Position numbers and translations under genes: made by a program. Below are positions 1-18,545 of a stretch of DNA of 18,545 nt, piece by piece. The stretch's first letter is position 1. The number at the start of each line of letters is the position of its first letter. The notes beneath the pieces were generated by a model. The model was not told where the DNA came from and did no database searches. It saw only the letters and a program-made list of their open reading frames with translations. Source of the stretch: Selaginella moellendorffii (Eukaryota > Plantae > Lycopodiophyta); NCBI RefSeq assembly GCF_000143415.4, contig NW_003314516.1:1-18545 (forward strand), in the 5' to 3' direction.

Positions 1-752
1 TAGCAAATAAGAGATAGTTTTTCTTTCATGTATATAAAATGTATAAAGAATTTGGTGGTTCTCACTCACCATATAACTATAGTTTGAATATTTCTTTTAG
101 AGTATTGCATAATTAAAACTTTTATAGAAAAATTACATTATCTTCTTATGTTGCAAATAACTATTCTACATTTCTTAGGTTTGGTCAATTTATAATTTCT
201 CAATATGTCTAGAACTATTCTCTATTGCCATTGGTATTGGTAGAAATCTGGATAAATTTGCTTATGTATGTTTTTAAATGCAAAACGAGATACATAATAG
301 AAATTCTATTATTCTTTAGTAAACTATAAATTTTAAAGGCATCATTACAATTCAGGTAATAAAGAAGTTAACTCAGTACACAATTAAATTTATAACTTCA
401 CCAAACCAGTTATAAAAACCTATTATTCTTTGGTATAATTCTTTGATTTTGTGAAAAATCAATTTTTTTTAAAGGTTGGCAGCAATCTTGTGGATGTGTT
501 TAGGGTTGTGCACCTTTTTGAAAAGGCAATAAAAAAAACTCAAATTTAAATTTCATGATGATAAATAATTGATTTTTTCTTCTTTAACACATGCATTATT
601 ATCTAATTGCATTATTAGAGCAAAGTATTACTCTAGAGATGTTTATCTCAACACTGTATACAATAAAAATTTCTAACATTCTAAAATTAGAAAAGAAGAT
701 CTATTTATCTTGGGTATGTTATATTTCCCAGCGGAGCTGGGGTCTCTGCTAG
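1..752 (+). mobile_element. 3'-terminal portion of a Helitron (starts upstream of the window)
   Basis: AT-rich non-coding DNA ending in the hairpin CCCAGC-GGA-GCTGGG (727-741) and CTAG (749-752), followed by T. About 245-752 aligns by eye with about 11365-11874, which ends the same way. Confidence 0.8.
727..752 (+). terminator. Helitron 3' terminal signal (GC hairpin + CTRR), copy 1
   Basis: 6-bp stem CCCAGC/GCTGGG with GGA loop, 7-nt spacer, CTAG, then T. This is the canonical Helitron 3' end architecture. Confidence 0.85.
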
Positions 753-792
753 TACTTCTTTATATTTAAACGAAAGAGCCAGTATAATAATA

Positions 793-948
793 GCATATGC
801 TGGCGTCACTTATTCTGGGCATATGCCAAAATCTAACGGCTGAGATTAAACAATGGGGAGTCGTGACTTTTGGGACCATAAAAACTTTTAATTGTCTTTT
901 AGGGCACGTGAGCACGAGGAGAGAGCGTCGATCATCGCTTGTGGGAAG

Positions 949-950
<2 letters not shown>
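793..950 (+). promoter_or_regulatory. Putative promoter / 5' UTR module in the leader
   Basis: Two GCATATGC palindromes (793-800, 819-826), AATCTAACGGCTGAGATT (AACGG MSA-like core within an AATCT/AGATT inverted repeat, 830-847), G-box CACGTG (905-910; CGCGTG in copy 2), then a candidate donor AAG|GTACTC before a (CT)n tract. Function is inferred. Confidence 0.4.
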
Positions 951-951
<1 letters not shown>

Positions 952-989
<38 letters not shown>

Positions 990-1009
990 CTGTGAGTGTG
1001 TGTGTGTGT
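952..1009 (+). repeat. Compound (CT)n-(GT)n microsatellite
   Basis: (CT)17 at 952-985 followed by a GT tract; shorter version at about 12072-12113. Confidence 0.95.
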
Positions 1010-1138
1010 TTGATGGAACGATTTAGAAGGCTACAGTCAGCTGTACATGATGCCACTGGTTGGTTCATTCTCGAGTTCAAAAGCTCATGCACCGGAAAAT
1101 GACAATCATTTAACCAACGCCGAAGCGTTCTTCAACAG

Positions 1139-2007
1139 GAGAATTATCCAGTTCGTGAAGAAACGAGTCGCACTTATGGAAAAAGTACTAACGCAGAATA
1201 TCATCTGGTAAAAGAGTCTCGACCCCCCTATTGTCGTCCCTGCGATTCTAACTTGAGATGTTCCAGGATGACCAAGATATTACGGCCAATCGCAGCAACG
1301 GTGGCATCGAGCCTGGCGAGGGACCAAAAACCTCCTACCAAAAGCCGCAACCCGCATTTGTTCCTTATCCAACACCTTTGAGTGAGTTCCTTCGATTTAG
1401 ACACTAGAAAAAACTCTAATGCGTTCGTTTTTGGACAGCTCCGGAAGAAGTCCTGGGAACAGCACTGGATAACGATCCTAAGCGGCTGAAAGCTCCAGCC
1501 TATTACAACAAGGTTGTGTTTGTTTCTCCATTTGCAAAGGTTTGAGAGGCTCACGGCTTTCTCTGTGTCGCCATAGTTGTGCTCGATGATCAGTGAGAAC
1601 AGGATCAACGCCTTCCAGACTTATGCGGGGAACAAATCCACCAGCATCCGCCTGCACAGGTGCATTTGGCAGATCGACGTGCTCTGCTCGGAAATGCAAC
1701 GAGGATTGGGAGTGAAAGGCGAAGAGGCTATGATGGATGGAGCTACGACAGGGACGACGTCTCGGACAATGAGGGGATTCACGTTTTCATCGACGACTAG
1801 AATCAAGGTTCTTCACTCTCTTGCTTGTCGCTATTCTTCTTTCGGGTCTCTCAAGTCCCTGTTTGTTCCAGGTTCTCAAGGCTGGAACCACGACTAGAAT
1901 CAAGGTTTTTCACTCTCTTGCTCTTCGCTATTCTCTTTCGAGGCTTAAAGTTCCTGTTTGTTCCAGGTCCTTGAGGCTGGAACCAAGAGAAAAAATAGAA
2001 ATTTTCG
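1139..2007 (+). CDS. Multi-exon reading frame of unknown function in the leader of unit A (start not identified)
   Basis: GT-AG introns 1208-1266, 1382-1438, 1513-1576, 1808-1871 and 1905-1966 join into one stop-free frame: ENYPVREETSRTYGKSTNAEYHL|DDQDITAN...VPYPTPL|TPEEVLG...APAYYNK|LCSMISEN...SSTTRIK|VLKAGTTTRIK|VLEAGTKRKNRNF. No family recognised. Confidence 0.45.
1793..1985 (+). repeat. Tandem duplication of a ~97-bp intron+microexon unit
   Basis: ACGACTAGAATCAAGGTT...GGCTGGAACC at 1793-1889 and 1890-1985. 1848-2007 recurs at 12253-12411. Confidence 0.9.
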
Positions 2008-3068
2008 GTTTGCTTCCTTGTTCTTCAGTTTTGCGTTTTTAAAGCATTGAGAGGGATTTCTATTTTGCAGCGCTATAAACCCTGTAGTCTCTACATGGAT
2101 AGTCATACGGGACAGCCATACATGGTGCTCTTCAGTTTATGACAAGTTCTCTTGAGGAAATGTTGGCAGTCTAGAACAAAAAAAATGGCTTGAAGGACAT
2201 GATGGAATACTCTCTTATAACAGTTATGGCTGTTCACATCTGAGGGTTTCATGTCTAACTCTCTCTCGTGTCACTTTGCAGCATTAGGAACGAAACAAGG
2301 AGAGCAAGCTCCTTGATTCTTCACTGTTGATAAGTTTCTTTCTCGCATTTTTTGCAGTTGTCACTGTTTCTGAGTCTCCACAATGAATGCTTTGGAAATG
2401 GGTATGTATGTGATTTACAGTCTTTGCAACGTAAGTTGAATGTGTTTGCAAAAGAACAGGTCATGAGTACTGGGAAGATGAAGGCATTGAAGAAAAAAAG
2501 CCAGCATGCAGGCAAATGATGAACAAACATATTTCACCCATATGATCCTGTCACTTACAGGTATCAATATACTGCTGTGTTAGCAGTGTTTACATTTATC
2601 CTTTCGTCTTGATTACAGAGTAGAACCTCTGATATCTATTCCTTTTGGAGAAAGTCAGTGAATATCTTGGGATACAGGTAAACATAGTGCTTTGTAAGGT
2701 TTGCTATCAAAGCTAGAGGAAGTTCTTCGGTTGGGGTATGGTTTTGTCACAGCTTTTTACGGCAGTATGGTGACAGAAAGGCTATCTAGAAGTCCCAATG
2801 GTAGAGTCGACTTAATGCTACAGGTAAGTCTTGCTCTTTGCTATCATGTCATTCTCGTGTGGATCCAGGATACAAAATTTAAGCTCCACTACATATCGCT
2901 ATCTGATCAACGACAGCAGTGGCTGGAGAGAGAGAGAGGAGATTTGGAGTCTGAATCACAGCAGTAGCAGCAGCAGCATCACCAGTGAGAAGATCTCAAG
3001 GCCATGAGAATCCTCCACCAGTTTGGGATCAGTCACATGTACGTAGCAACCAGGTGAGAAGGGCAGTG

Positions 3069-3116
3069 CGAGGGACAGGGACGAAGATCTCACGAGGGAC
3101 AGGGATGAAGATCTTA
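3069..3116 (+). repeat. 24-bp tandem duplication
   Basis: CGAGGGACAGGGACGAAGATCTCA / CGAGGGACAGGGATGAAGATCTTA, 2 mismatches. Confidence 0.9.
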
Positions 3117-3392
3117 CAGGGTCCGTCATCACCCGATTGATGAGGTCCTGGTTTGCTCTATCACTTTGGAGCCATCTCTGAATGGCAAGGTGAGCTTCAA
3201 CGTGGTGGCAGTGATCCAGAGCAGCAGCTCTAGAAGTGGTAATGATGACCATGCGTTTCTCTACAAGGACATGGTGCTGTACAAATCCAATTACTATTAG
3301 CATCACATGTCTGAGGACAAATTAAGTGAAGTGGTGCCAGATTCAATTGTATTTGTGTTGTAATACTACATTATATATAAGGTGTCTCCTAC

Positions 3393-3646
3393 CCTTGACT
3401 GGCTACAAAAAATAGCAAATGTCTTTCCCTCTTTGCTCTAAGTGAGCACTCTGACCAACACACATAACAGTAACATATGTGTCGAGAAGGCCAAGTACAA
3501 GCCCACTGCTCAGTTCAAGCTCAAAGTCACCTTGCTTCTCTACATTTATATCAACAGCTCCTCTACATAATCAGGCTGTGTACTCCACATGAACCATGGA
3601 GCCTAGAGTTGGCCTGTCACAAGATGTCTCTTCTCCTCTGGTATTC
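3393..3646 (-). pseudogene. HEN1: HEN1 small-RNA 2'-O-methyltransferase fragment (PPIase/FKBP-like domain exon); may extend upstream to about 4540
   Basis: AG/GT-bounded exon reads NTRGEETSCDRPTLGSMVHVEYTA*LCRGAVDINVEKQGDFELELSSGLVLGLLDTYVTVMCVGQSAHL. This resembles the plant HEN1 PPIase-like domain as I recall it (NIEG...PSNGSL..ISYSVSL...ES.EEFEFEIG.GAV...LE..VTQMSVGQSA.F). Weaker HEN1-like stretch NDILLMNLSASCISLVLLRKSPT..GSYK at about 4400-4530. In-frame TGA at 3571-3573. Confidence 0.65.
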
Positions 3647-4559
3647 CTGTTGAAGCACTAAGCAACAAGTAAGCAATACAAACCTTACACCATATCACTC
3701 ACGGTCACTTTTGCAAAAGCTTACTTAAATTCCACGCTTGCGCAGACTCAGAATCATGTAAATATGAGCGCACACTCGCAGTTATGCTCGCTGTCCCAAT
3801 ACAGAATTTTCCTCCTCTTTAGTGCTGCTGATATCAGCACATGGAACTGCACACTCACTAAAGAGAATCCATTCACTGCGAAGAGGAACCCACCAAAAAA
3901 AATCCCTCCCGTGCTGTTTAGAACTCTCATAGCAGGCCGGAAGATAGGGCTTCACGCATTCTTCCAGGGCTTGAGCATGGAGTTGGGACGGTAGCATTCT
4001 CTGTGGTAGTGCCATTGCTAGGGATTTCAATATAACATGTTCTTGGGGCCTAGATCGAGAAGCTTTATGGAACCACTCCACTGGAATCATCTCCACATGG
4101 TGGGGTAGCCTCGAGATTGTTATGATGATCCCTATTTGTCTCTGTCTTTCCTTCACATGATGTGGTGGAGAACACAAGGACAACAACAACATTGGCTTCG
4201 CATAATGAGCCTCTGGGAAAGTCCTACAAACAGTTCCATACGGTTCTCAACTATTTGTGGCGTATGGATCACAGATTTGGTGACTCTTGTACTCAGTGTG
4301 CTGCCTAACTCTTCACTTATTTCCTCTGGGAATGATCAGAAAGTAATAACTTGAACAATGTTTTCTCTGCTTCTAAATTTCCAGGCACTTCCACTCTTGT
4401 ATGACCCTGATGATAATGAGAATGTGGATAATGTGGACTTATCACACGAGCACGTACTGTGGGAGACTTTCTCAAGAGAACTAAACTAATACAAGATGCA
4501 GATAGGTTCATCAAGAGAATGTCATTCACTTCTTAGTGACTGCTTAGTGCCTGTAAAGT

Positions 4560-5660
4560 TCACGAGGACTTGGAGAGATGATCAAAAGGTGGCGATGGAT
4601 ATGCTTAAGTGTGTGAAGCGTGAGCATATGAGTTCTGTGCTTTGTAGGAGCTTCATTATTGCCGAGACTTGAATTCAAACTATCTCTTTATCATCATCAA
4701 ACTCTTTATTTAAAGTTGCTATTTTGGCATCGGCGTCACATATTCCATTTTTCGAATATCCATTTTTACTTATGGCAGATGCTCTCAATTCAACGATCCA
4801 GATTTGTGACGCTCCAAAGCAATGGTGCGGATTGTTACATGGTGGCAAAGAGCTTGGTTTTAGGTTTAAGAAACGGTCAATATGGCTGTCCGTATCTGGA
4901 GCATATTGGATGCTAAAATTTTATTGTGGGAGAAGAAGCGCATCGGATGAGAAGTAGAACTTTCCCGTCCCATATACTGTACATCCAAGACCTCAAGAAG
5001 AAGGTGACATCAGAGGTGATTTTTGTTTCAGAATTTCTGAACGATACAGGTATTGCTCAGAAGAAAAAACAAATTTACTGCTTCTCTAGGTACTCTAACA
5101 TTCAAGCGAATCCAGGGTGCCTTGCAGCATTTTTCCAGTCCAGTGAAGCTGATCAATGGCATCGCAACAAAATCCAGTGAGTTTTGTTTTAGAAAAAAAA
5201 ATGACTACCATCTTTGGATATGCCTGTACAGCTTGCTTTGTGTAGCTCTAGGAGATGTAGTCGAGGTGCTGGTTGGAATAGGTGGAGAGGCAAGAGCTCA
5301 GGCTGGGAAGCAACATCCTTGGAAGCTCTCCAAACAGGATCCGATTGATGCACATGTCTGCCTGGGTGGAGGTGCGCTCTCTGTTCCTCATTACTAGAGC
5401 TCACTGCCACAGATTCTGGAGAGGTCAAGAGACTGTTGGACTTCCAGGGAGTAGTTAGTGGAAAAGGTAGCTGACCTGTTTCATCACTTTGTTTCATTTC
5501 TGTGCTGCTGCAGAGTGACAACTTGCACACCAAGATAGAGGAGGATGAGAAAGAGAAGCTGTAGAAAAAGTAAGCCCACATCCCATCTCTGTGGCCATGT
5601 GTCTGAATCCATCTGTGTTGCAGGGAAGAGGAACGTCAGCTCCAGAAGGAGAAAAAGAGA
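4560..5660 (+). pseudogene. Unidentified decayed exon remnants
   Basis: GC-richer blocks separated by short GT-AG intron-like stretches (for example exon-like 5091-5177 and 5232-5467). No family recognised and no long spliced frame verified. Confidence 0.3.
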
Positions 5661-5839
5661 TGAGGCCCTTCCTGTCTGTCATTTTTGGACGAGGTCGACA
5701 GTTACACTGATGAAAGGGAAATGACAGCGATGAAGGCGAAATTGACAGCGCTGGAATGGTTTGGCAGCTTCAATCAAATCCAGTAAAAGATGAGAGGTGG
5801 CAGATGAACAGAAAAATAAAAAAACTGGGCAAGTTTGGG

Positions 5840-7705
5840 ATCTCACCAGTATGGGGAAGACTGGGTAATGCTTTGCGTGTTTGTGTTTTTTCCAACCATG
5901 CTGTTCGTGATTCCAGCGGAAGTTCTCGAAGGCCAAGTTAATCTTTTGAGAGTCGAGTTAGGAGAAGTTCAACTCACAAAGCTCTTGGGAGGAAAGAGGT
6001 GGATCAGATGCCATGGTAAACACGTAAACCTCCTATTTTCTTTCATTTTTTTCTTCAGGAATTCCATCTCTTGTTGCCAAGCCGCTGGGGTGTAGGGAAT
6101 TAAAATGCCTGATTTGGTAAATTCATGAAGCCTTGTTCCGCTTTTCCTGACGAACACTGTAGGTACTCCAAAGGCCTCAGCTACGATTCTATACTGGACT
6201 GGGACAGCAACACTGCTTCTTGATCTTCCTCGCATTCGTTATTATTCTTCTCAGAACTAGGTAGCCACAATTTTCACTAAAATCTAAAACAAGCACTGAC
6301 TAAAGTCACGCAGATCCGAGTTCATTAAAAAATCCTGGACCGCATAAGGTGCTGGTATAGTAGCATAAAATTTTTTTTACGATGCTAATCAAAATCTCTC
6401 TCTTTTGCACTTCTTTTTAGGTGAAAGTTATTCTTTTTTCTGACACAGAAGAGCGTGCATTTCCATTCAGAAGAGAAGCGGCCAAGAAGGACTCCGAGTT
6501 GATGTCTTTCGGATGTGTTTTGTGGAGGCAAGAGGAAGCTTCGATTTTGAAAAGCCGGTAGTTTTAGTGATAATCACGTGAATTGATTCATGCTTTTGCG
6601 TGTGGAGCAGGTTTGGATTAGAGTTGGCACCGGCAGTAGTTTTCATCAAAGATCCAGGTGTCCAGCCCATAACTGTTTATGGTAAAAATCTTCTTTTCGG
6701 CAGCTTTGAGATGATTTCTTTCACTTTGCGGGTAAATTGCAGGTAAATTGCGTGACTCCTTCATGGAAACTGTGGAAGAACATAAAGTTCATGGTAAGTA
6801 CTATGTAGGCTCTTCCTCCTTTTGCTATCTTTTGAATTGCAATTTGATGTGCGTGCTTTTATTTCTTCCTCAGCTGCAAAGCATCACGGCTTCCAAACTT
6901 GGATGTGATCCCGCGGACTTCTCTGCAGCTGGAAAAGATGTAGAAACATGGTACTGCATTGTGGTTGCTGGAAGGCCTGGTTTTCAGCTTGATCAACTCT
7001 GCAGTGTAAGATTTTCTTTCTTGTTGTTTCTAGCTGACGAGTTTCTCATTTTAGACGATGAGAATTGTGCAAGATGAGCTCGTGTAAGTGAGGACATTGA
7101 TAGCCAAAATTTTGCTGCTGCCACTGCATACAAAGACAAGCATTTGAGCCTATCATGGCTTGACGGCGAAATGCAAAAGGTGGATACTTATATAGCTCGC
7201 TGGTTAATTAATCCTTGTTTTTGTGCAGAAATTTTGCTATTACTGCCTCCCTTCTGAACCCGTCCATGAGACTTGCAGGCCGAGGCAGTACCAAGTGCAA
7301 GACGTGGAAAGGATTTTGATGATACGTTTTAGAAGAGATCCAACATCAAAAGCCGGTGGTGAAGAGAATCAATACCTGGTGGCGTTTGAATTATGAGGAG
7401 CCAGATTTAGCATCGATGCTTATTGCTCCATACAGTGATGCAAATGAAATCTCGGAGGTTGGTTGGTTTCATTTAGACTTTTTTCTCTTTTCTTTGCTAT
7501 ACCAAAGAGTTTTTCTGTAGGTTTTATCGTGAATTTCTAATAGTGTTCATGATGGCGACACAAATGAAATTCCATTCTTTGTAAGTGTTGTGGTGTTTTG
7601 AAAGTTTGGAGAACTCTTGACTGTGGGATTTTGTTAGAATACTAAGTCGATGCCTGCGTTAATACCCGAGGAGCAAGCAGTCTTGATGCTCTCTTCAACA
7701 CGGAA
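5840..7705 (+). pseudogene. Internal fragment of a DnaJ/thioredoxin-fold protein gene (DNAJC16-like, Arabidopsis At1g18700 family), lacking the J domain
   Basis: About 12 short-intron exons: SPVWGRL|AEVLEGQVNLLRVELGEVQL|GIPSLVAKPLGC|...LLDLPRIRYYS|GPHK|VKVILFSDTEERAFPFRREAAK...VLWRQEEAS|FGLELAPAVVFIKDPGVQP|QLQSITASKLGCDPADFSAAGKDVETWYCIVVAGR|LSWLDGEMQK|KFCYYCLPSEPVHETC|...DGDTNEIPFF|..MPALIPE. Several stops and frameshifts. Confidence 0.8.
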
Positions 7706-8089
7706 TGCTGTGAGTGGAATGAGGAGATTTATAAATAAAAGTTTGTTTAGAAATTACAGATTGTGCATGTTATTAGCTTCTATGCACTATTTGGCAGAAC
7801 AAAAAGGGAACACTACATTTAATAGAGTATGCATGACTGTAAGCTTTTAATTTTGTTGATGTTTCTTGTAAAAAAAAATTATAAATTGAGCTAAAGGACA
7901 AAAGAAAATGTAATTCAAAATAAAAATATTACATAAACAATCAAAAATTAAAAAAATATTTTAGAAGAAACTAAATTTTCTTTTCAAGATAAGAGCTTCA
8001 AATAGACTTGTTACATAGTTAGAGAAATTTTTCTGAGAGTTCATATCAACTTTCTTTCTAAGCATTATTGGTTGTACAAAACTTTTGGT

Positions 8090-8386
8090 TCCATACTAGA
8101 GGGATGGCTGGCTGGATCCCTCCTGGGTTGAGTCGGAACAAGGCCCCATAGTACTAGCAATCACAACTTGAACAGATGTGTAGGAAGCTGGTATATCTAT
8201 CACATGTAGCCATAAAGATTCGAAAACTACAACAACTTTTGCTTGAAGCACTTGAAAAGAATGTGGTAGACAGCAACAAACCTGTACAACGTCATGAACA
8301 GCCGGATGTCTGCCAGAGTGAGCGAGTTGCCACACAAAAATCTCAAGCACTGAAGGTGTTTCTCAACAGTTTCGAGTTGTTCCCTG
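8090..8386 (-). pseudogene. Glutathionyl-hydroquinone reductase (Xi-class GST, ECM4/YqjG-like) C-terminal fragment
   Basis: LETVEKHLQCLRFLCGNSLTLADIRLFMTLYRFVAVYHILFKCFKQKLL*FSNLYGYM*DIYQLP...YYGALFRLNPGGIQPAIP matches GHR motifs (ADIRLF.TL.RFD.VY..FKC, DIYQ, LNP.GI.P). Two stops plus a deletion/frameshift; cut by the gap. Confidence 0.85.
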
Positions 8387-8486
8387 NNNNNNNNNNNNNN
8401 NNNNNNNNNNNNNNNNNNNNNNNNNNNNNNNNNNNNNNNNNNNNNNNNNNNNNNNNNNNNNNNNNNNNNNNNNNNNNNNNNNNNNN
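8387..8486. other. Assembly gap (100 N; true size unknown)
   Basis: Run of 100 N. The GHR reading frame does not continue on the other side. Confidence 1.
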
Positions 8487-10225
8487 GTTTAAAGAAGATA
8501 GCAGAAAAAGAGATGCTAAGAGATAGCGAGCTCTTGATAAAGAAGAGATTGAGCTTGCAATCTTGATAAGCAGGATTGAACCACTTACACAGATATCCCA
8601 AGTAAACAAAAGTCGTGATGTAGCACACTAAGGACACAGCAAGCGAGGCATTATACCTGTGCGAATACCCAGACAGACACATATCCTTGCAAGAGGAAGA
8701 GATCTAACATCAGTTGCATTGCCTGACACTAGATTCAGGAGCTTCCTTAGAATGGCTTGTGGTGGCAGGGAGCATAGAAACATGAGTTCAGGCCACAAAG
8801 GTCACCATTTCAATCTTATTATCAAAGGGTCCTTAACAAATGTGTTACAATCCACTGCTACAAAAACTAACATTGTAAATTCGTGCAAATAATGGTATCC
8901 TAAGATCACAATCTCCTATTTCAATAGTCCAAGCTAACACATTATTGCAAATGAGAAAAGATGAGACCTTGTAGTAAGTAGAAAAATAAGAAGTTGATAG
9001 TTGGCCTAAAGAAGGATTTTAGAGAAAAAACATATAATGGATTTGGCATTTGAAGCAAGAAAGAATAAGGAAGGTTGCTAATATTATGAAAAATATAGTA
9101 GTATTTATATTGGAAAGTAATTTGTTTTCTGCTATTTAGAGAAATCTTTGGTGATGTAGATATTCCAAACATGCAATTCTTATGAATATCTCAAAAATAT
9201 CATTATTTTTTTAGAAAACACTACTCTTGAAGACTTAAGAAACTACAAGAAAAAGCTTTGTTAGCTTCTTCTTGGATATGAAAGAAAAACTTGAGCTACC
9301 TTCTGCAGTTCCATAAGCTAAGGAGTCCTTGCTGGTACATCCAAGCACATGAAGTTCCTTGGGTGTTAAGTCTTATCAAGTGGTGGGCTATTCAATGAGC
9401 ACGATAAAAATTAAAAATAGGTTGAGAAAAAGGAGAAACAACATGTCTTACAAATAGCAGATAGGTTTTTTTAAAAAAGTTAGAATTTATGCTAGGGTCC
9501 TCCCATGATTAATTTAAATGATGATATTAAAAAATACCACAATAAACCAGATAAATTCAAATAATACAGCTTTTTAATTATTGATAATGTAGATACTGAA
9601 TAGTTCTATTACTAATGCAGTAATATTAATGGCATGCATTGGAAATTGGGATTAGAGCAGTAATAAAAAATGGAATTTTGTCACACATAATGACACTTCT
9701 ATGACAATATAGATTTACTTCTTCTGGTAAGCAAAGAAAATCCATAATATCATTCACCATTATAGTGTTCAGAAAATGGTAATAATGTCAATAATAAGCA
9801 CTATTTTATTATACCATGATAAAAATAAAACAAAATGATAATATTTTATATATATATATATATAAAATATACCTTTTACAATTACTCTCTGGAAGAGTTA
9901 TTTATAATAATAAGATTCTCAGAAAAACTTTTGGCACTTCAAAGATGAAGAGTTAAAGCAAAAAGAAATAGAAAAATTAAATATCCAGGTAAAATTCAAA
10001 GTAATGACATCTAATCAACATGAGTATACAATTGTGTATCAAAATAATTTCTAGAAATTTCATTATATTAAATAGTGTCACTAATGTATTGGTGAGATTT
10101 ACTAAATAATTGTAATAACACTTCAAGAATTAACAAACTCCAGCTTGAAGAAATTTTATGAGTAATTTTATGTTCTAAATAAATTTATTTATAAATATTA
10201 AAAGTTAGTGAATTCACTTCATTTA

Positions 10226-11874
10226 TCTACATATTTATATTAAACGAGAAAAGTAAGGTATAATATATTGTACACTTATTGTAATGTGCTGGTTAATGCA
10301 ACCATGAAGTATTCACACTTTATTTATTATAATGAGTTTTACAAGATGACAAATACATATAAAAAATACTAAATAGAAAATTTAAATATTATAACAAATT
10401 AGACATTAGAGATTAAATATTTTTAGTTAAAAAAAATAGTGGAGTATTTAAAGTAAACAATAAAACAAATGAGTGCTAATTTCATGAAATATAAATTAAA
10501 AATTATATTTTAAACTAATTTATTTATGTTATTCAGAGAGATGGTTGATGATATAAATATCCAAAACATGCACATACTTAAGGAAGTATTAAAAATGGTA
10601 TTAGTTTTTTAGGATACTTATAAGTACAATTAATTTTCTACAATTGATTTTTAGACTTCTAGATTTCTACAACATTTATATTAATATGTATATTACATGT
10701 TAATATAATATGTATATAACATGTTAAAACTATTATCTCTATAATTTGTTTTTAAAAACAGTTGCTATATTTATGATATGTTTTAATAATATGTTTTAAT
10801 AAATTTAAAAATATTATAAAATATCATTCCTTTTTTTGTTTACATAGCAATATGAGGTCTAATTTTATATATTTTATTTTATTTTATTTTAAATTTAAGT
10901 ATCAATAATATAATATTTAATAGAAGAAAATAAAGATGTATTGAGAATAATGTGCAATAGTAACATTTTACTCACAAAAGATAAGCTTAATAGTCCAATA
11001 TTTTTTTCTAATTTCAAAATAAAAAATATAAATATAAATATTAAAATTATTTAATATGACATTAATTAATGGATCCTATACAAAAAATAATTATTTTAAT
11101 ATGTAAATATTAATATTATCTACATGTTTATATTTAAAACATTAATATTTTTATATAATATATTAATCTGTTATCATGTTCTCCTTTATATAATTGCTGA
11201 ATAATAAGTAGTGTTGAATCATTCAATAGTAATGTTTTTATAAATTGGAATGTATAGTTTTATTATAAAGCATTAGTAGAGATTTGTCTTAATACAATTG
11301 TATCTCTAATATAATTATTATCTTTGGATGTACCTCTTTTCAAACACCTCTTATGTAGTGTGAGTATCTAGATAGATTTACTTATGTTTATTTGTAAATA
11401 TAAATCGAGACACATAATAGAAATTCTCTTGTTCTTTATTAGACTATGAAAGTTAAAGGCAGCATTATAGTTCAGATAAAAATAAATAAAGCTCAGCATG
11501 TAATCAAGAAAATAGTTTCCCCAAACCTATTTTTTTGCCAGTATATAATTCTTTGGTTTTGTGAAAACTCAATTGGTTTTAGATCATGGCATCAATCTTG
11601 TAGACGTTTTTAGGGTTTTGTATCATTTTATAAAGACAATAAAAAAATTCAAATTTAAATTTAATGATGATTAAAAAGTTATCTTATCTTTTCCAAAACT
11701 TGCATTTTTTATCTATTTCCATTATTGTGCATTTCTTTAGAGGTAAAGAGTTGCAAAATTAAGATAAATTTAACTTTGTATACAATCAAAATTTCTAACA
11801 TTGTAAGATTAGAAAAAAAGATGTATTTATCTTAGGTATACTATATCTCCCAGCGGAGCTGGGGTCTTTGCTAG
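10226..11874 (+). mobile_element. Candidate short (~1.65 kb) AT-rich non-autonomous Helitron forming the 3' end of unit A
   Basis: A|TCTACATATTTATATTAAACGAGAAAAGTAAGGTATAATA at 10225/10226 is a canonical A|TC start resembling the leader start (TATATTTAAACGAAAGAGCC.GTATAATA). It ends hairpin + CTAG|T. Confidence 0.5.
11849..11874 (+). terminator. Helitron 3' terminal signal (GC hairpin + CTRR), copy 2
   Basis: CCCAGC-GGA-GCTGGG (11849-11863), 7-nt spacer, CTAG (11871-11874), then T. Confidence 0.85.
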
Positions 11875-11877
11875 TAC

Positions 11878-12411
11878 TCATATATTTAAACGAAAGAGCC
11901 GGTATAATAATAGCATATGCTGGCGTCACTTATTCTGGGCATATGCCAAAATCTAACGGCTGAGATTAAACAATGGGGAGTCGTGACTTTTGGGATCATA
12001 AAAACTTTTAATTGTCTTTTAGGGCGCGTGAGCACAAGGAGAGAGCGTTGATCATCGCTTGTGGGAAGGTACTCTCTCTCTCTCTCTCTCTCTGTCTCTG
12101 TGTGTGTGTGTGTTTGATGCGGTCTTCATTGCAGAGCACCTCAGAGCTACAGTCAGCTGTACGTGAAGATCTGAAGCTGCTACCGATTGAAAAGCTCAGG
12201 AAACCGTTGTCAATGGCCATGCGCCGGAAAAATGACAGTCTTTTTTTGAGACTCTCAAGCCCCTATTTGTTCCAGGTTCTTGAGGCTGGAACCACGACTA
12301 GAATCAAGGTTTTTCACTCTCTTGCTTTTTGCTATTCTCTTTCGAGGCTTAAAGTTCCTGTTTGTGCCAGGTGCTCGAGGCTGTAACCAAGAGAAAAAAA
12401 AGAAATTTTCG
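11878..12411 (+). repeat. Conserved Helitron 5' leader, copy 2
   Basis: Matches 757-1108 and then 1848-2007, lacking about 1109-1847. Confidence 0.95.
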
Positions 12412-12450
12412 TCCCTGTACTTCTCCTCGGGACAGCCACAGCTCCACGGC

Positions 12451-13366
12451 TCCATGGCTATTGGCCCCATGCATTTCACAGTCATCTCTACAGAACATGA
12501 CTGGAGCTCGACCAGCGAACAAGTATGCATTCTTATTCTTTTCATCTTTCCTTCAACGAAACCTTCTTCTACAGTACGCTTGGATGAAATCTGACCTTGA
12601 ATCTGTCGGCAGATTCAGTACACCATGGATAGTTTTCACAGGGTAACTGTTTTTATTCACATTTTCATTCTGTAAACTCATGTGTGCTATTTTTCTTTCA
12701 GTCATCGACCTATGTACTCCACTCAACTGCGGGGGATTTATTTCTAAACTTTACCAGGTGTGGATCCGAAATTTGTAGCAGCTGTGGAACCATTGCTCTT
12801 GAGAAACAAGGTAAAACACGAGCTCTTCAAAGGGAAAACTAGAATGAAACTGTCTTTTTTCTTTTTTCTTTTTTTTTTTTGCACAGGTTGATTTAGCAGT
12901 GTGGGGGCATGTTCACAATTACCTGCGAACTTGTGCTGTGTTTCAGGGCGCTGCCTGCAGCACCCGATCAAGGATTTAGCAGGCGTCGATTTCTTTGACA
13001 CTACAATTTACTCAGCTCCAGTTCACACCGTGGTTGGCATGGCTGAATTCACCTTGGATGACTTCCCTCATAATGTAAGCTTGCAGCTTTGTTTCCTATA
13101 TTCAAGCTCTTTATATGGTATTGATATTCTACCTTTTCTATTTTTTTTGTCGACAGTTTAGTTCATGGAGCTTGATTCGAAGGTCGGCATTTGGATATGC
13201 AAGAGTGACAGCTGATAAGACAAAGCTACTGTTTGAGGTAGATGAATTGCGTTCTTGGTTCTTGCATGTTACTTATTTATTTTTCATTCCAGTACATTAC
13301 AACGGACGGACAGTAGCTGACCGATTTAAAATTGCCAAGCTAGATTGGGGATTTTCCAGGCCATGA
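12451..13366 (+). pseudogene. Purple acid phosphatase / nucleotide pyrophosphatase-phosphodiesterase type, 3' half only
   Basis: Exons 12451-12522, 12575-12642, 12702-12810, 12887-13074, 13157-13237, 13293-13366: SMAIGPMHFTVISTEHDWSSTSEQ|YAWMKSDLESVGRFSTPWIVFTG|HRPMYS..*..VEPLLLRNK|VDLAVWGHVHNYLRTCAV...APVHTVVGMA|FSSWSLIRRSAFGYARV. Metal-ligand motif GHVH is present. TAA at 12745-12747 and frameshifts. Confidence 0.92.
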
Positions 13367-13416
13367 ACGATTTCAAGCTTTACAAGTTCAATAGTTGGCT
13401 TGTAGAGCTTGCTGAT

Positions 13417-14198
13417 TTACTTGACACTGCCAAGAGCTCTTGCTTTGCTGCACAGCACCTGTTTTTGGATCTTGCCAGTCGCAGTTTTGTCCAAGGCTGT
13501 GAGAATGACGATGCTCTTTGGCACCATGAACTTCGGTAAATGCTGTCGATACAACAAGAGTATCTCCTCGTTGCTTCTCACGCCGTGCTTGAGGGACACA
13601 AACGCACATGGAGACTCACGCTGTGCTTGAGGGACACAAACGCACATGGACCACTGCTCATCTGGCTGCGCCACCACAGCAGCTTCCAACACTGCTGGAT
13701 GCCTGGATGAAAAAGAAGCAAACTTTAACAAGAAACAAAGAAGGAAAAACTCTCCTTTTACCTGTACAAGATGCTCTCCACTTCCAGGTTGCTAATGTTC
13801 TCCCCTCCAGAAATGATAATATCCTTGGCTCGATCCTTGATCTTGATGTATCCATTGGGATGCCAAACTGCCAAGTCCCCAGAGTCTGGATTGTTCAAGT
13901 ATCCCTTGAACACCATGTTCCCACGTATGCAAACTTCGCCAATGGTGACACCGTCCTTGGCAACCGGTTCTAGAGTTTCATCTCTGATAATGTATTTGTC
14001 TTATTTGTTTGGTTCTTCGTCACTCCTTACTCGCTCGCTGCTTCTGCTAAATTTTTTTGCTTGCTAGCTCGGAGTTGAGCACCTGTAAGCCATCGAGGCA
14101 AACGTATTTCACGCCCTGCCGAGCCTTGAGCCTGGCCTGCTCATCGGGCAAAAGGCTGTCCCATTCGGGATTCCACTCGCACACAGTGCATGGACCAC
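13417..14198 (-). pseudogene. Acyl-activating enzyme (AAE7/ACN1-like short-chain acyl-CoA ligase), 3' part only
   Basis: GPCTVCEWNPEWDSLLPDEQARLKARQGVKY...[73 protein letters not shown]|HPAVLEAAVVAQPDEQW..ESPCAFVSLK...KTATGKIQKQVL. Intron 13703-13761. The GWFH segment before SGD is deleted, with insertions at about 13615-13650 and 13980-14070. Confidence 0.92.
13577..13650. repeat. 36-bp local duplication inside the AAE fragment
   Basis: 13577-13612 and 13615-13650, one mismatch. Confidence 0.9.
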
Positions 14199-14499
14199 AG
14201 TGCATGAAAGAGTGGGAAGAGGCTAGCTGCCTATTTTTCTTTCTATGCACTTCCTTTATGGTTATCTCCAGTTTATTTTTGAGTAGGTGGTATCTGTGGC
14301 TATATATATTTGAATGTGGAGTCATGCTAGAGAAATGCGAAACAACATGATGACTTGAGTTCCAACCCAGGCCCAGTGCATCTCCTCTTTTTATTGACCC
14401 ACCACAATGATGAGCATCTATTATGCTAGGAAGAAAACGTAAGCTTTTAGTTAATAGCTTATAGTGCCACAATTTCGTCTGTCTGTACCAACTATCAGC

Positions 14500-14790
14500 A
14501 TTGCAAACTTTGTGGAGTCATGTAGAGGCCGAGACTCTGTAGGTTCTGTTGAAGGTGTTGTAGTGAGTATCAATGATATAGGCTACAACAGTGGTCAACT
14601 CACAATAACAGATAACATCAACGAGTCTGATATGATATAGTAAGTTCAATATAGCATGTGGATCCCTGACAATAATCTATATGATGGCAGCTCAAATTCC
14701 ATGGCAACATAATGGAATTATTCAAAGAGTTGATGAATGAATGTTTTTCTGGAACTCCACCAACAAGATGTTTCATTAATTTACAAGGAG
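14500..14790 (+). pseudogene. Possible degenerate RPA-like OB-fold fragment
   Basis: IANFVESCRGRDSVGSVEGVVVSINDIGYNSGQLTITD... and ECFSGTPPTRCFINL resemble the GvVvsi / ltitD / lSgT.aTr..in motifs of plant RPA-like OB folds. Short and degraded. Confidence 0.35.
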
Positions 14791-14875
14791 ACGGTTATTT
14801 CAAGAGAGCAAATGTCACAGGCATGAGCATTGTTTCATGTATAATAGATGATGCCAAAATAATTCCTTGACTCTG

Positions 14876-14990
14876 TTTTTCGGAATATTGCAAGGGAATG
14901 CAATATTCTATGTATACAATGTACAATGTATACAATGCACTATGCTCCCAGCGTAGCTGGGACTTTTTCGGAATATTGCAAGGGAATGCA
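14876..14990. repeat. 27-bp direct repeat enclosing two hairpins, one resembling the Helitron terminal hairpin
   Basis: TTTTTCGGAATATTGCAAGGGAATGCA at 14876-14902 and 14964-14990 (exact). Stem GAATATTGCA/TGCAATATTC at 14883-14908. TCCCAGC-GTA-GCTGGGA at 14946-14962. Confidence 0.9.
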
Positions 14991-15179
14991 CAGGGGTAAG
15001 TGCGAAAGGAAATGAAACAAGCCCATATTAAATACACGTTGTTTTGTAGATACCTGGATACTTTGAAGTAGATAAGCTCTGTCCAGTTTTTATACACACA
15101 GTTTGTTCATTATGCTGCGGATCAAGATTGCAACAAACTTCTAAAGATGAAGCAATATGTAAAATATGTAAATATGCAG

Positions 15180-15970
15180 GACCTATAAAGGAACACATCA
15201 CGCTAAAGGGCCAGCTTCACCTTGGACAAGACACGTTCCAAGTAGCTATACCTTCGCATTTTGTTGATCAACTGTATGGAACAAAGGAACTTTGACATTC
15301 CTTAAAAAAAATAAACCTTTGCCTTTACATCTGTGCCTTTACTCTTTGATTTCTGATGTTGAAGCATCTGAAGCTTTTATGCAGAAATTGTTAGAGTCTA
15401 GAACAATGCACTGGATCTTTGCAGGGGAACATTTGAAAGAACCCAGCACTTGAGGTGATATGCTCATTAAAGTTTGTGATTTGTTTATCTTTTTTTAGGC
15501 ACTTCAAGCATTGACTTACATGGGAACTTTCATTGATGGGGGCAACGATTCCATTGAATATATTCCTAACCTTTCAACATCAGAAGGTTTGTAAATCAGC
15601 TGTTTACAAACATTCCTAATTCTCCCACTAATGTATTACATACCTGGAAAGAGATGTGTATAATTGCATTGCATGGATCACACTGCTTCATATACTCCAA
15701 TCAAATATACAGGCCTGCTGTGTGTGGATTGTTGAGGCACGTTCGTGAAAAAAACTCATGGATTATGACATACTCTACTTGCGCAGATAACTACAACTTA
15801 ATGTTCTGCTCAGCAAGCAGCCAGAAGAATATCTGGTCTGTCTCTAGAGATTGCAAAGTTGTGTAATGGTCCAAGATGACAGAACTGAAGCCAAAGTGAT
15901 AGATGTTTACAATATCAATGTGCCTTTCATTGGTGATCCAATGAACACTAGAGTGCATATCCTTCAAGGT
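15180..15970 (+). pseudogene. Unidentified decayed exon remnants
   Basis: Blocks bounded by plausible AG/GT sites, such as GPIKEHITLKGQLHLGQDTFQVAIPSHFVDQLYG (from 15180) and ALQALTYMGTFIDGGNDSIEYIPNLSTSE (about 15499-15586). No family recognised. Confidence 0.3.
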
Positions 15971-16383
15971 TAATGTAATTACAGAATATGTATTTAAAAA
16001 TCATGATATAGAAAAGGCTGAACTTCTTCTTACAATCAAGTAAGCTTTCCCACACTTTCATATTCAAAACCTTTAACATAACCACCTATGAAATCTCATG
16101 CTTGAATATTTCTTTGTTAATATAAAGAAACAATATAAACGAAAAGCCAAGAACTGAAATATATATGACACTCCCAGATTTGTCTTCTGATATTTCTTTT
16201 ATAAAAAATAAACACAAATGTAAAGCACTACGACTACTAATGTTAGTTTTGTCTAAATACATTACAAATTAGTTATTTAGTTACAAATTGTTTGTAACTA
16301 ATTACATTATGTATGTATGTATATAACATTTTTAATTTTTTTTCTCTGTTTCATGTTAAGGGACAGAGTTCTAAGAAGCTGAG

Positions 16384-17609
16384 ATGCCATATAAGAACAT
16401 CAGGGGCCACTGCTACCGATGGTCTTTTCATGCCAAGGTGAGACACAAAGGGAAACTTGTATTCTTTGAAACAGGCACAGCTGGGTGTGTTATGTCAGTT
16501 GCTGTTGCCGATGCATAAAGTTCCAAAATACATATTGTTGGGTTTGGCATGAATGCAAAGCATCTTTCATGATATTGAGCAAGGCAGTGTCTATATATTT
16601 TCAGGGAACAGTGGTATACAACACTCTAAACCAGCATATACACCATATAAATCAAATTGGGAGATAAAAGCAGCAAGACTATGGAGATCAAGTGTGTAGA
16701 GGACGATCTACGTATTCCAAATGTTGTTCTTAATAGAATGAGTGTTTTAGATGCTTCTAAGCTCGGCCAAGAGACATTTATAGACGTGATTGGTGGTGTA
16801 ATGTGGAATAGACAAACATTTCTCCTAAGGATTCTGGAGCATTCATGAGAAGGAGGATGCTTTCTTTGAGTGATGAATCAGGCCACAGTATAGACATGTG
16901 TCTGTGGGATTCAAAGGCCGAAGATGAAGGTTCAGAAATCGAGGAGAAACCTGGACGAGGGCAGAAGCCTACTGTATGCCTGAAGGGCAGCCGGATTTCA
17001 GATTACAATGGCAAGTCTATTTCAGTCACAGGTGGCTCTACCCTTTTAGTTGATCCTGAATTAGAAGATGTCTCATGGCTGTGTGAATGGATGGTTGCTA
17101 GCTACAACACAACCATATTTGTCCATGTGACCAACTCTTCTTCTAAAGCAGTGATTTCTGGTACAAAGACAGTATCTGAGATGTTGTCTATCAACCTGAA
17201 GGTTTCCAAGTTCTCTGCTATTTTTCATGTTATTGTGTAAGTGAAAGAATTCCAGACTGGTGACTTCTATTACCCAGCATGCGTGAAGGTTGTCAATGGA
17301 AGCCAATGTGGCAAGAAGGTTACTCAGGTTTCGGAAAGTATGTGGCAATGCACTTGTGACACTGATTCTGGAGATATTCACTTCAAATATGCACTACACT
17401 TGTGTATTCTGGACAGCACTGGACATATATAGGCGGTTGCATTTGATGATGCTAATGAAATTGTAGATATGCCTGCATGTAAGCTGGCTGCGCTACAAGA
17501 TGATGATTATACTGTTTTTTCAACCGTAATGGACTCTATTTGATCAAAGATGTACAATCTGAAGATTCGTTGCAAGCTCGAGAGCTACAGAGATACCAAA
17601 AAATTATAG
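16384..17609 (+). pseudogene. RPA1: Replication protein A 70-kDa subunit-like (OB folds DBD-A, DBD-B, DBD-C with zinc finger), intronless, Helitron-associated
   Basis: MPYKNIRGHCYRWSFHAKVRHKG (DBD-A), FIDVIGGV...RRMLSLSDESGHSIDMCLWD...RISDYNGKSIS...LLVDPE (DBD-B), FYYPACVKVVNGSQCGKKV...WQCTCD...YALHLCILDSTG (DBD-C). Stops at 16516-16518, 17238-17240, 17430-17432 and 17541-17543, plus frameshifts. Confidence 0.92.
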
Positions 17610-18545
17610 TTGGTTTTGACACTTAAAAGAAAAAATGTGTGAGAAAACAAAAAGTATGTTTTATTTCTTTCTACTATTGTTTTATAATTTGTTGTGTGTG
17701 TATCAAGTTTCTAAGTATAAGCCAAGCTGGAGCTTTCAAAACTAATGTTGTGTAGAAGTTGATGAATGATTAAAACAATTTGTAATAATGTAATTAGTTA
17801 AAAACTGTTTAAATTAACTAAGTATTGGCAAACATTGCTACATAATAGATTTAATAAATAAATTTTTTGTTACATATAAATATGTGAATTAATAAATAAT
17901 TTTAAATATTAAAATATAATATTATCACTAATGTATAATTTTAATACAGTATTATATTATTATCACTAAAATTATCAATAATTTAATATAAATATTATAA
18001 TATGCATCTAGCTTAATAATATAATTTCAATTTTAGTACATAGACTAATTTTTTATTTCTAAAACTGAGTCTATGATATAGATCATACTAAATATGGTAG
18101 GTCATATAGAGTAGAATACAAAATAATAATCACTACCACTGCCACTATGAGCATCTATATACATATATGATCTTTTAAAGCTTTAGCTTCTTCCTCTCAC
18201 AAAATATTAAGTTTCTGGATTTTCACTCATACAACCATTTGTATTGAACCCATCCCTTAAGAGTGGGATCTCATAATGAGTAATTCCACTTATAGAAGAT
18301 CAAAGATACAATGTTATGAGTTTTATTTATTATGTAATGATGTGTGTTGCTGATAGAGTCAATTGTAGAAGGGATTTTTAATATAAATATTATATTATGT
18401 TTAACCATATATCTTATAATTATTATTATGTTAAAATTATAATTATGATTATAAATCTTGTGTAAAATAATTTTTTATCCAGTAATCTTATTGTTATTTT
18501 AAAAAAACATAAATAAAATTAAATATATTGAGTTGTCAAATGGCT

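What the first reader, a model, noticed from the sequence alone, without database searches (positions are those of the whole stretch)
727..11900. Head-to-tail array of gene-capturing Helitrons: same junction and leader, completely different cargo per unit
Seen: the hairpin + CTAG end abuts a TC-initiated conserved leader twice, 11,122 bp apart. After a shared leader the units carry non-overlapping sets of intron-retaining host-gene fragments (A: HEN1, DNAJC16-like, GHR, unknowns; B: PAP, AAE7-like, OB-fold, RPA70). Known: Helitrons end TC...hairpin-CTRR, make no target duplication, capture genomic gene pieces (well documented in maize) and often encode RPA in plants. Inference: a cassette-like array of cargo-variable elements acting as an exon-shuffling platform, probably in a non-seed plant. 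Simple rolling-circle concatemers would be expected to repeat the same cargo.
Basis: partly seen in the sequence, partly recalled or inferred. Interest (0 to 1): 0.85.

Follow-up and report, generated by a model that had tools for sequence, protein, structure and literature searches.

The report
Stacked gene-carrying Helitrons in a spikemoss
This small scaffold of the spikemoss Selaginella moellendorffii is a head-to-tail stack of at least four defective rolling-circle transposons (Helitrons) that share end sequences but carry different pieces of host genes, which is a clear example of something already known from maize and bats.

Summary
The window is the whole scaffold GL377820.1 of Selaginella moellendorffii. 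The repeated junction is real. A 6-bp hairpin, CTAG and a conserved leader occur at 727-993 and 11849-12113, with leader starts 11,122 bp apart (95-97% identical).

I sampled about 143 kb from seven other scaffolds. There, 13 hairpin-CTAG ends of this family are all followed by T, and 12 abut a leader. Two tail types and several leader types combine freely, and the switch lies at the hairpin-CTAG.

Canonical Helitron ends are seen. Related leaders start with TC directly after CTAG. Two start with TC after an A inside another element. One CTAG is followed by non-leader DNA.

So the Helitron reading holds, with four corrections:
- The window's two leaders start TA, not TC.
- "Unit A" is two elements. 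One is cut short at 4690, followed by a second element (4691-11874).
- The cargo of unit B is confirmed (acid phosphatase, acyl-activating enzyme, RPA70). HEN1, DNAJC16 and GHR in unit A are not. The one piece I identified there is a CHD3/PICKLE fragment.
- Two paralogs join the flanks of the assembly gap with 46 nt between them.

Stacked and chimeric Helitrons are already described, so this is a new member of a known kind. The scan has noted such stacks about 25 times elsewhere in this genome. How the stack was built, and whether it shuffles exons, was not shown.

The parts
1..752 (+). U0: the 3' part ('tail type 1') of an upstream Helitron. It ends in the hairpin and CTAG.
   Evidence: Positions 246-752 match 11366-11874 at 74-85%, rising to 96% in the last 26 nt. 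The same tail occurs in L001, L007 and L008.
727..752 (+). 3' terminus of U0: a 6-bp hairpin (727-741), a 7-nt spacer and CTAG (749-752).
   Evidence: Folds as DNA at -6 kcal/mol, z -2.4. The same structure is found at 13 family ends.
753..4690 (+). U1: a Helitron cut short at its 3' side. Contents:
- leader type 1 (753-949)
- (CT)n(GT)n (950-1017)
- CHD3/PICKLE C-terminal gene fragment (about 1100-1800)
- 97-bp tandem module (1793-2007)
- unnamed module (2431-4690)
   Evidence: Positions 1164-4691 match L006 9908-13428 at 98.4%. Full-length copies in L006, L002, L005 and L009 run on past 4691 to a tail-2 hairpin-CTAG.
4691..11874 (+). U2: a complete non-autonomous Helitron. Contents:
- 5' end TCATCATCAAACTC (leader type 2b, 4691-4850)
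- unnamed interior
- assembly gap (8387-8486)
- AT-rich stretch (about 9300-11365)
- tail type 1 (11366-11874), with hairpin at 11849-11863 and CTAG at 11871-11874
   Evidence: The leader profile hits 4701-4845 at E 1e-15. The same element lies in L007 at 9287-19001, bounded by CTAG|TC and CTAT|TC. Here it is preceded by an A of the U1 interior.
8387..8486 (.). Assembly gap inside U2.
   Evidence: Two L007 paralogs join the two flanks with 46 nt between them. No listed contig bridges the gap.
11875..18545 (+). U3: a Helitron that runs off the end of the scaffold. Contents:
- leader type 1 (11875-12070)
- 97-bp module (12239-12411)
- cargo, then an AT-rich stretch resembling tail type 2
By analogy with L001 and L005, its 3' end would lie about 1.1 kb beyond the scaffold.
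   Evidence: Collinear copies occur in L001 (92-95%), L005 and L004. In L001 the hairpin-CTAG lies at 13190-13215.
12454..13316 (+). Purple acid phosphatase C-terminal half. It lacks its 5' part and keeps its introns.
   Evidence: Pfam Metallophos_C. Annotated as a 140-aa model.
13417..14517 (-). Acyl-activating (AMP-binding) enzyme C-terminal part. It lacks its 5' part and carries a 38-bp-spaced tandem duplication at 13577-13650.
   Evidence: Pfam AMP-binding_C at E 5e-15 and AMP-binding. Repeat D11. Annotated gene model.
14903..14990 (+). An 88-bp insertion. It consists of 61 nt that include a tail-2 hairpin fragment without CTAG, plus a 27-nt direct repeat.
   Evidence: Repeat D15 and the hairpin match. 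The insertion is absent from the L001 and L005 copies.
16375..17432 (+). RPA70-like gene remnant (OB domains A/B and a truncated C domain).
   Evidence: Pfam REPA_OB_2 at E 1e-13 and Rep_fac-A_C at E 5e-10. Encodes P0001, SELMODRAFT_432333. Hits PDB RPA70 chains.

Best explanation
The scaffold is a head-to-tail stack of at least four non-autonomous canonical Helitrons of Selaginella moellendorffii, all in the same orientation:
- the 3' tail of U0 (to 752)
- U1 (753-4690), cut short at its 3' side
- U2 (4691-11874)
- U3 (11875 to beyond the scaffold end)

Shown:
- Each element ends in a short hairpin plus CTAG. Each begins at a T that opens an AT-rich conserved leader.
- Between the leader and the tail the elements carry different intron-containing pieces of host genes: CHD3/PICKLE in U1, and acid phosphatase, acyl-activating enzyme and RPA70 in U3.
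- The units and their ends are multi-copy in the genome and occur elsewhere with other neighbours.

Inferred:
A later transposition then started at the U1 5' end and stopped at the first 3' end it met, that of U2.
- The zero-spacer CTAG|T junctions probably arise because a resident Helitron's 5' boundary (host A, then element T, then an AT-rich leader) is itself a good Helitron target. New copies land exactly there, and the stack grows upstream.
For: - Organism and scaffold.
- Repeat and junction.
- Hairpins fold. One copy (L001 17440) has a different 14-bp palindrome in the same place.
- 13 family 3' ends were found in the window plus about 143 kb from seven other scaffolds. All are followed by T, and 12 are followed directly by a leader.
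- The two sides assort independently. The junction at window 11874 and the one at L009 9389 share 94% of the leader but have unrelated tails. L009 and L001 13216 share the tail (90-96%) but their leaders are only 82% and 63% identical.
- Canonical boundaries are seen: CTAG|TC in L007 and L008, A|TC at window 4690/4691 and L008 4912/4913, and CTAG|T followed by non-leader DNA at L005 12717.
- The same element occurs with different flanks: U2 here and in L007, and full-length U1 in L006 and L009.
- Summed contig depth is highest on the leader. In run X3 it is about 3990, against 490-920 on the tail and 15-20 in the lowest bins.
- Cargo.
- The same 5' module precedes Kelch and kinase cargo at other loci.
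- A RepHel with strong Helraiser matches (E about 1e-33) lies in one sampled locus.
- Precedent in papers: canonical junctions, AT-rich target preference and 5'-abuts-3' insertions (PMC4778049), and multi-terminus Helitrons arising from nested ones (PMC3288121).
Against: - The two window leaders start TA, not the defining TC.
- No empty site was found, so insertion without a target duplication is not proven.
- No autonomous partner with these same ends was identified. The RepHel in L004 is on the opposite strand and shows no matching ends.
- Nearly every 3' end abuts a 5' end. That could instead mean junctions are inherited inside larger composite units. L002 and L006 clearly share one junction by descent.
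- The loci were chosen by homology to the window's cargo, so the 12-of-13 figure may be biased.
- The interior of U2 has no recognisable gene fragment.
Confidence: 0.72

Rival explanations
1. The elements are Helitrons, but the stack was not built by repeated insertion at resident 5' ends. Instead the junctions are mostly inherited. Multi-unit composites move together when the weak 6-bp hairpin terminator is bypassed, or they are copied by unequal crossing-over or segmental duplication. Cargo is then exchanged by recombination between dispersed copies.
For: - L006 and L002 are collinear across a junction.
- L007 holds two U2 copies in tandem.
- The tail1|leader1 junctions at window 752, window 11874, L008 11745 and L001 17484 are alignable on both sides.
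- Read-through of 3' ends is documented for Helraiser (PMC4778049).
- Rearrangements such as the inversion in L005 show active recombination.
Against: - At least five different tail and leader combinations exist, which needs several independent junction formations.
- Identity changes across the junction. For the two window junctions it is 74-85% on the tail and 96-97% on the leader.
- Neighbouring units in the window share no cargo.
Confidence: 0.3
2. The true mobile unit is circularly permuted relative to the reader's model. The hairpin, CTAG and leader form one internal block (an origin or promoter) of some other element, and the real ends lie elsewhere.
For: 12 of 13 hairpin-CTAG sites are followed by a leader, and 12 of 15 leader starts are preceded by one.
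Against: - The leader occurs without a hairpin at window 4691 and at L008 4913. Both follow an A.
- The hairpin-CTAG occurs without a leader at L005 12717.
- Tails and leaders recombine freely, with the switch inside the roughly 35-nt core.
Confidence: 0.06
3. This is a decayed tandem or segmental duplication of a host locus, or a mis-assembly of a repeat-rich small scaffold.
For: The scaffold is small, unplaced and contains a gap. The repeat spans both sides of the junction.
Against: - The units occur on seven other scaffolds in other combinations.
- Contigs from independent 2024 runs cover the region and show it to be highly repeated.
- The join at 4690/4691 is not inside a shared repeat, and L008 has an analogous join.
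Confidence: 0.04

Closest known systems
Gene-capturing maize Helitrons with multiple termini (Dong et al. 2011, PMC3288121)
   Same: Non-autonomous elements carry several intron-containing gene fragments acquired stepwise. Nested insertion followed by transposition from one element's 5' end yields chimeric, multi-terminus elements.
   Different: Here the host is a lycophyte. The shared 5' module is long (about 200 bp of leader, often followed by a PICKLE fragment). Zero-spacer stacking is the usual state in the sample rather than the exception.
Helibat / Helraiser (Grabundzija et al. 2016, PMC4778049)
   Same: Shared features are the 5' end joined to a host A, CTAG-3' joined to a host T, a hairpin that acts as terminator, an AT-rich target preference, and documented cases where one Helitron's 5' end abuts another's 3' end. 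Captured promoter and splice-donor leaders (HelibatN3) are also described there.
   Different: No transposase with matching ends was found here. The window's leaders start TA. Promoter activity of the leader was not tested.
Tandem (rolling-circle) Helitron arrays in plant centromeres and elsewhere (Xiong, Dooner and Du 2016, as cited in PMC5148889 and PMC12001565)
   Same: Head-to-tail orientation with direct 3'-to-5' junctions.
   Different: As cited, those arrays are described as tandem insertions of truncated Helitrons and are attributed to rolling-circle replication. Here neighbouring units differ completely in cargo. A same-unit tandem was seen only in L007.
RPA-only 'mother' Helitrons such as rice Mothra (PMC4683698)
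   Same: An element retains an RPA-like gene near its 3' end but has no RepHel.
   Different: That paper found Helitron RPAs only in monocots and dicots. Here an RPA70-like remnant sits in a lycophyte Helitron. Whether it is a captured core RPA70 or a Helitron-type RPA was not resolved.

Membership tests
Canonical Helitron (Helitron1), non-autonomous | 3' end has a short GC-rich hairpin a few nt upstream of terminal CTRR | tested here: met
   The hairpin lies 6-8 nt before CTAG at 752 and 11874 and at 11 other family ends. One of these ends in CTAT and one in ACTAG. One copy keeps a different palindrome in the same place.
Canonical Helitron (Helitron1), non-autonomous | 5' end begins with TC | tested here: inconclusive
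   Met for U2 (TCATCATCAAAC at 4691) and for relatives in L007 and L008 (TCAAAC, TCATCAAAC, TCCTTC). The leaders at 753 and 11875 begin TA (TACTTC, TACTC), one base away from the TCCTTC variant.
Canonical Helitron (Helitron1), non-autonomous | Insertion between host A and T with no target-site duplication | tested here: inconclusive
   All 13 3' ends are followed by T. Both 5' ends that do not follow a 3' end are preceded by A. The uninterrupted site in U1 paralogs reads ...TTTA|TTTT. No matched empty site with both flanks was found.
Canonical Helitron (Helitron1), non-autonomous | Many copies sharing termini but with different flanks and interiors | tested here: met
   U2 occurs here and in L007. 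U1 occurs in L006 and L009 with different right-hand neighbours. The leader profile finds 10 copies in about 122 kb, plus more in L007-L009. Contig depth peaks on the leader.
Canonical Helitron (Helitron1), non-autonomous | An autonomous RepHel-encoding partner with the same termini | tested here: inconclusive
   RepHel remnants in L004 hit Helraiser 7LCC at E about 1e-33. They are on the opposite strand and no matching ends were found.
Canonical Helitron (Helitron1), non-autonomous | Captured, truncated, intron-containing host gene fragments | tested here: met
   PAP, AAE and RPA70. CHD3/PICKLE C-terminal fragment.
Helentron / Helitron2 | Asymmetric terminal inverted repeats and a TT target | not tested
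   No dedicated search was made. The A|TC and CTAG|T boundaries observed are those of the canonical type.
Tandem or segmental duplication of a host locus | Copies are collinear along their whole length and confined to one locus | tested here: not met
   Only about 1 kb is shared between the two units. The modules recur on seven other scaffolds in other orders.
Structured RNA gene (snRNA, spliced-leader RNA) as the identity of the leader | Match to a curated RNA family | tested here: not met
   Rfam at E up to 1 gave no match, and no tRNA was found.

The most novel reading that the evidence does not exclude
This Helitron lineage integrates preferentially at the exact 5' boundary of resident Helitrons. 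That boundary is a host A, then the element's first T, then an AT-rich leader. It is recreated after every insertion, so ordered stacks of mixed elements grow in the 5' direction. If so, the transposase may be using a resident left end, its normal nicking substrate, as the target.
Probability: 0.3. Interest if true: 0.65.

Novelty: new member of a known kind. Interest (0 to 1): 0.4.

Why it matters
This locus gives a well-delimited set of Helitron ends and units from a lycophyte. The boundaries can be read directly: CTAG|T, A|TC, and a (TCA)1-3 repeat at one 5' end.

In the sample, zero-spacer stacking is the normal state rather than a rarity. That makes Selaginella a practical place to test whether Helitrons target each other's 5' ends or instead travel as read-through composites.

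It also warns annotators. Several 'genes' on this and related scaffolds are chimeric models built from transposon cargo, including PAP, AAE, RPA and models that join a PICKLE fragment to Kelch repeats or a kinase domain.

Tried and rejected
- Rfam (E up to 1) and tRNA scans of the window found nothing, so the leader is not a known RNA gene.
- Pfam was run on 40 ORFs of unit A, PDB sequence searches on three, and motif scans for GHR (CPWxxR), DnaJ (HPD), methyltransferase motif I and FGCG. None supported HEN1, DNAJC16 or GHR. Exons shorter than about 45 aa were not tested systematically.
- The earlier-findings search by sequence was blank, which means nothing by the operators' own note.
- Look-ups of P0003, P0005 and P0010 found no record.
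- Read laying on 7001-13000 gave relative depth. The listed pieces included no contig bridging the gap and no clean map of the boundaries. A loose end at 8494 differs from the left flank and probably comes from another copy.
- The degenerate junction at L001 2626 could not be aligned to a leader.
- I looked for family-type ends around the L004 RepHel. A compound palindrome lies about 30 nt before a CTAG that is followed by A, which is not convincing.
- RNA evidence is weak. Runs guessed to be RNA hold only small shares of the sampled words, at most 0.13. The single read-laying run had already been used.
- I considered a promoter, first exon and splice donor reading of the leader (GGGAAG|GTAC at 949/950). 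The donor is not conserved in the L001 copies and expression was not tested, so I left it as a possibility.


Full report
**What the window is.** An RPA-like ORF of the window retrieves protein SELMODRAFT_432333 of Selaginella moellendorffii, whose longest contig is 18,545 bp. The look-up places it on GL377820.1 of assembly GCA_000143415.2, so the window is that entire small scaffold.

**The observation.**
- Self-comparison shows 246-1015 matching 11366-12119 at 79% overall, and 1835-2007 matching 12239-12411 at 91%.
- The hairpin CCCAGC-GGA-GCTGGG lies at 727-741 with CTAG at 749-752, and again at 11849-11863 with CTAG at 11871-11874.
- The sequence after CTAG begins TACTTC at 753 and TACTC at 11875. 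The starts are 11,122 bp apart, a figure that includes the 100-N gap estimate.
- Identity rises towards the junction. It is 74-76% at 100-500 nt upstream, 85% at 26-100 nt upstream, 96% over the last 26 nt, and 96-97% over the first 195 nt downstream.
- The junction repeat is therefore real. The leaders are not literally TC-initiated, and similarity extends on both sides of the junction.

**The gap.**
- In the laid stretch 7001-13000, no listed contig bridges 8387-8486. A loose end before 8494 differs from the left flank, and at 80% likeness it probably comes from another copy.
- Locus L007 (GL377693.1) holds two paralogs of this region. In both, the sequences that flank the window's gap are collinear with 46 nt between them.
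- The two sides therefore most likely belong to one element, and the true gap is probably short. ORFs listed across the Ns are artefacts.

**Is the junction a real element boundary?** I fetched about 143 kb from seven other scaffolds through proteins related to the window's cargo (L001, L002, L004-L009).
- A profile of the leader finds ten copies in the window plus the first five loci, and more in L007-L009.
- A scan for the terminal structure finds 13 family 3' ends. All are followed by T, and 12 are followed directly by a leader.
- There are two unrelated tail types. Type 1 is the one in the window. Type 2 occurs in L001 13190, L002, L005 12690, L006 and L009.
- There are several leader types: type 1 (TACTC), type 2a (TACTCC), type 2b (TCAAAC, with one to three TCA repeats) and a TCCTTC variant.
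- Tails and leaders occur in at least five combinations.
- Pairwise profiles show that the two sides assort independently. The junctions at window 11874 and L009 9389 share the leader (94%) but have unrelated tails. L009 and L001 13216 share the tail end (90-96%), but their leaders are only 82% and 63% identical.
- The hairpins fold. In L001 17440 a different 14-bp palindrome sits in the same place, so the structure is kept while the sequence differs.

**Three exceptions pin down the boundary.**
- At L005 12717 the tail-2 hairpin-CTAG is followed by TAAACATTTTT, which is not a leader.
- At window 4690/4691 a type-2b leader follows an A of unrelated DNA. At L008 4912/4913 the same happens.
- In L007 and L008 the same 2b leader directly follows CTAG as CTAG|TC.

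These are the canonical Helitron boundaries, host A|TC...CTAG|T host, as recapitulated experimentally for Helraiser (PMC4778049). The TA start of the window's leaders differs by one base from the TCCTTC variant at L007 19002.

**Unit A is two elements.**
- Window 1164-4691 matches L006 9908-13428 at 98.4%.
- L006, L002, L005 and L009 all continue past the equivalent of 4691 with a common sequence. In L006, L002 and L009 that sequence leads on to a tail-2 hairpin-CTAG; in L005 the match stops earlier. The window instead switches to a 2b leader.
- U1 (753-4690) is therefore a 3'-truncated copy, and U2 (4691-11874) is a separate element.
- U2 recurs in L007 from 9287 to 19001 with the same ends and different neighbours.
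- The remainder of U1 does not follow the 3' end of U2. The simplest history is a U2 insertion into a U1-type element, followed by a transposition that began at the U1 5' end and stopped at the U2 3' end. This is an inference. The mechanism has been proposed for maize Helitrons with multiple termini (PMC3288121).

**Cargo of U3.**
- A purple acid phosphatase C-terminal half lies at 12454-13316 on the + strand.
- An AMP-binding enzyme C-terminal part lies at 13417-14517 on the - strand.
- An RPA70-like remnant lies at 16375-17432 on the + strand.
- The whole block is collinear at 92-95% in L001. It is also present in L005, split by an inversion, and partly in L004. It is transposon cargo, not a local host gene cluster.
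- By analogy with L001 and L005, the 3' end of U3 lies about 1.1 kb beyond the scaffold end.

**Cargo of U1 and U2.**
- None of the 40 ORFs tested gave a Pfam hit better than E 0.01, and none reached a gathering score. Three gave no PDB hit, and motif scans were negative.
- A gene model covering about 1100-1700 (P0010, from a paralog) has distant homologs that are CHD3-type chromatin remodelers. These include Cryptomeria PICKLE, and the match falls in their C-terminal region.
- HEN1, DNAJC16 and GHR are therefore unconfirmed.
- In other copies the same leader, with or without the PICKLE piece, precedes Kelch, kinase or DCD cargo.

**Abundance.** Summed contig depth in three 2024 DNA runs is highest on the leader. 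In run X3 it is about 3990 at 11801-12000 and about 1760 on the 97-bp module. It is 490-920 on the tail, 260-310 in the U2 interior, and 15-20 in the lowest bins. The tool warns that this is not a copy number. As a relative measure it shows that everything here is repeated, and the leader most of all.

**Transposase.** L004 carries RepHel remnants with strong matches to Helraiser (E about 1e-33). They lie on the opposite strand from the nearby leader, and I found no matching ends. An autonomous partner is therefore not established.

**How the stack formed.** Two readings remain.
- In the first, a resident Helitron's 5' boundary is itself an A|T followed by AT-rich sequence. That is the preferred Helitron target context (PMC4778049), and the site is recreated after each insertion. 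New copies landing there would give zero-spacer CTAG|T junctions and stacks that grow upstream.
- In the second, junctions are inherited inside composites that move by terminator bypass or are copied by recombination. L002 and L006 share a junction by descent, and L007 has a same-unit tandem.
My sample is small and was chosen through cargo homology.
- Cases where one Helitron's 5' end abuts another's 3' end, and tandem Helitrons in general, are already reported (PMC4778049, PMC5148889, PMC12001565).

**Verdict.** The Helitron-stack reading is right in substance, but it was wrong or unverified on several details. There is no evidence here for an exon-shuffling function. The scan's notes list about 25 other head-to-tail Helitron findings in this genome, so this is a genome-wide habit and not a peculiarity of this scaffold.

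Noticed in passing
window 4691-4702; L007 9287; L008 679 and 4913: The extreme 5' end of leader type 2b carries one, two or three TCA repeats before AAACTC (TCAAAC, TCATCAAAC, TCATCATCAAAC). The number of repeats therefore varies right at the nick site.
   Followed up: partly
window 14903-14990: An 88-bp insertion specific to this copy of U3. It has 61 nt that include a tail-2 hairpin fragment without CTAG, flanked by an exact 27-nt direct repeat. It is absent from the L001 and L005 copies and looks like filler DNA copied from a Helitron 3' end.
   Followed up: partly
window about 1100-1800; proteins P0010, P0014, P0017: The piece directly after leader 1 is a C-terminal fragment of a CHD3/PICKLE chromatin remodeler. 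In Selaginella it heads annotated chimeric 'genes' joined to Kelch, kinase or DCD domains.
   Followed up: partly
window 1793-2007 and 12239-12411: A roughly 97-bp unit is repeated in tandem (about 2.2 and 1.6 copies). It has very high summed contig depth, second only to the leader. Its nature is unknown.
   Followed up: no
L005 7155-18726: A copy of U3 is split by an inversion. The breakpoints correspond to window 14322/14323 and 2713/2717.
   Followed up: partly
L004 12367-16118, minus strand: Fragmented Helitron RepHel. It matches Helraiser residues 176-349 and 1242-1431 at E about 1e-33. It lies next to, but on the opposite strand from, a leader-1 copy and an RPA-bearing unit.
   Followed up: partly
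window 16375-17432; proteins P0001-P0007: A multi-copy RPA70-like gene sits in lycophyte Helitrons. PMC4683698 reported Helitron-type RPAs only in monocots and dicots. Whether this is a captured core RPA70 or a Helitron RPA is open.
   Followed up: no
L007 998-19001: Two U2-type elements lie in tandem with a CTAG|TC junction. This is a same-unit pair, unlike the mixed stack in the window.
   Followed up: partly
L005 12451-12930: The tail-2 region is duplicated in tandem. The first copy ends in hairpin-CTAG. The second lacks the hairpin.
   Followed up: no
window 13577-13650: Two 36-nt copies spaced 38 nt apart lie inside the AAE fragment. They are absent from the L001 copy, where the protein motif reads through normally.
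   Followed up: partly
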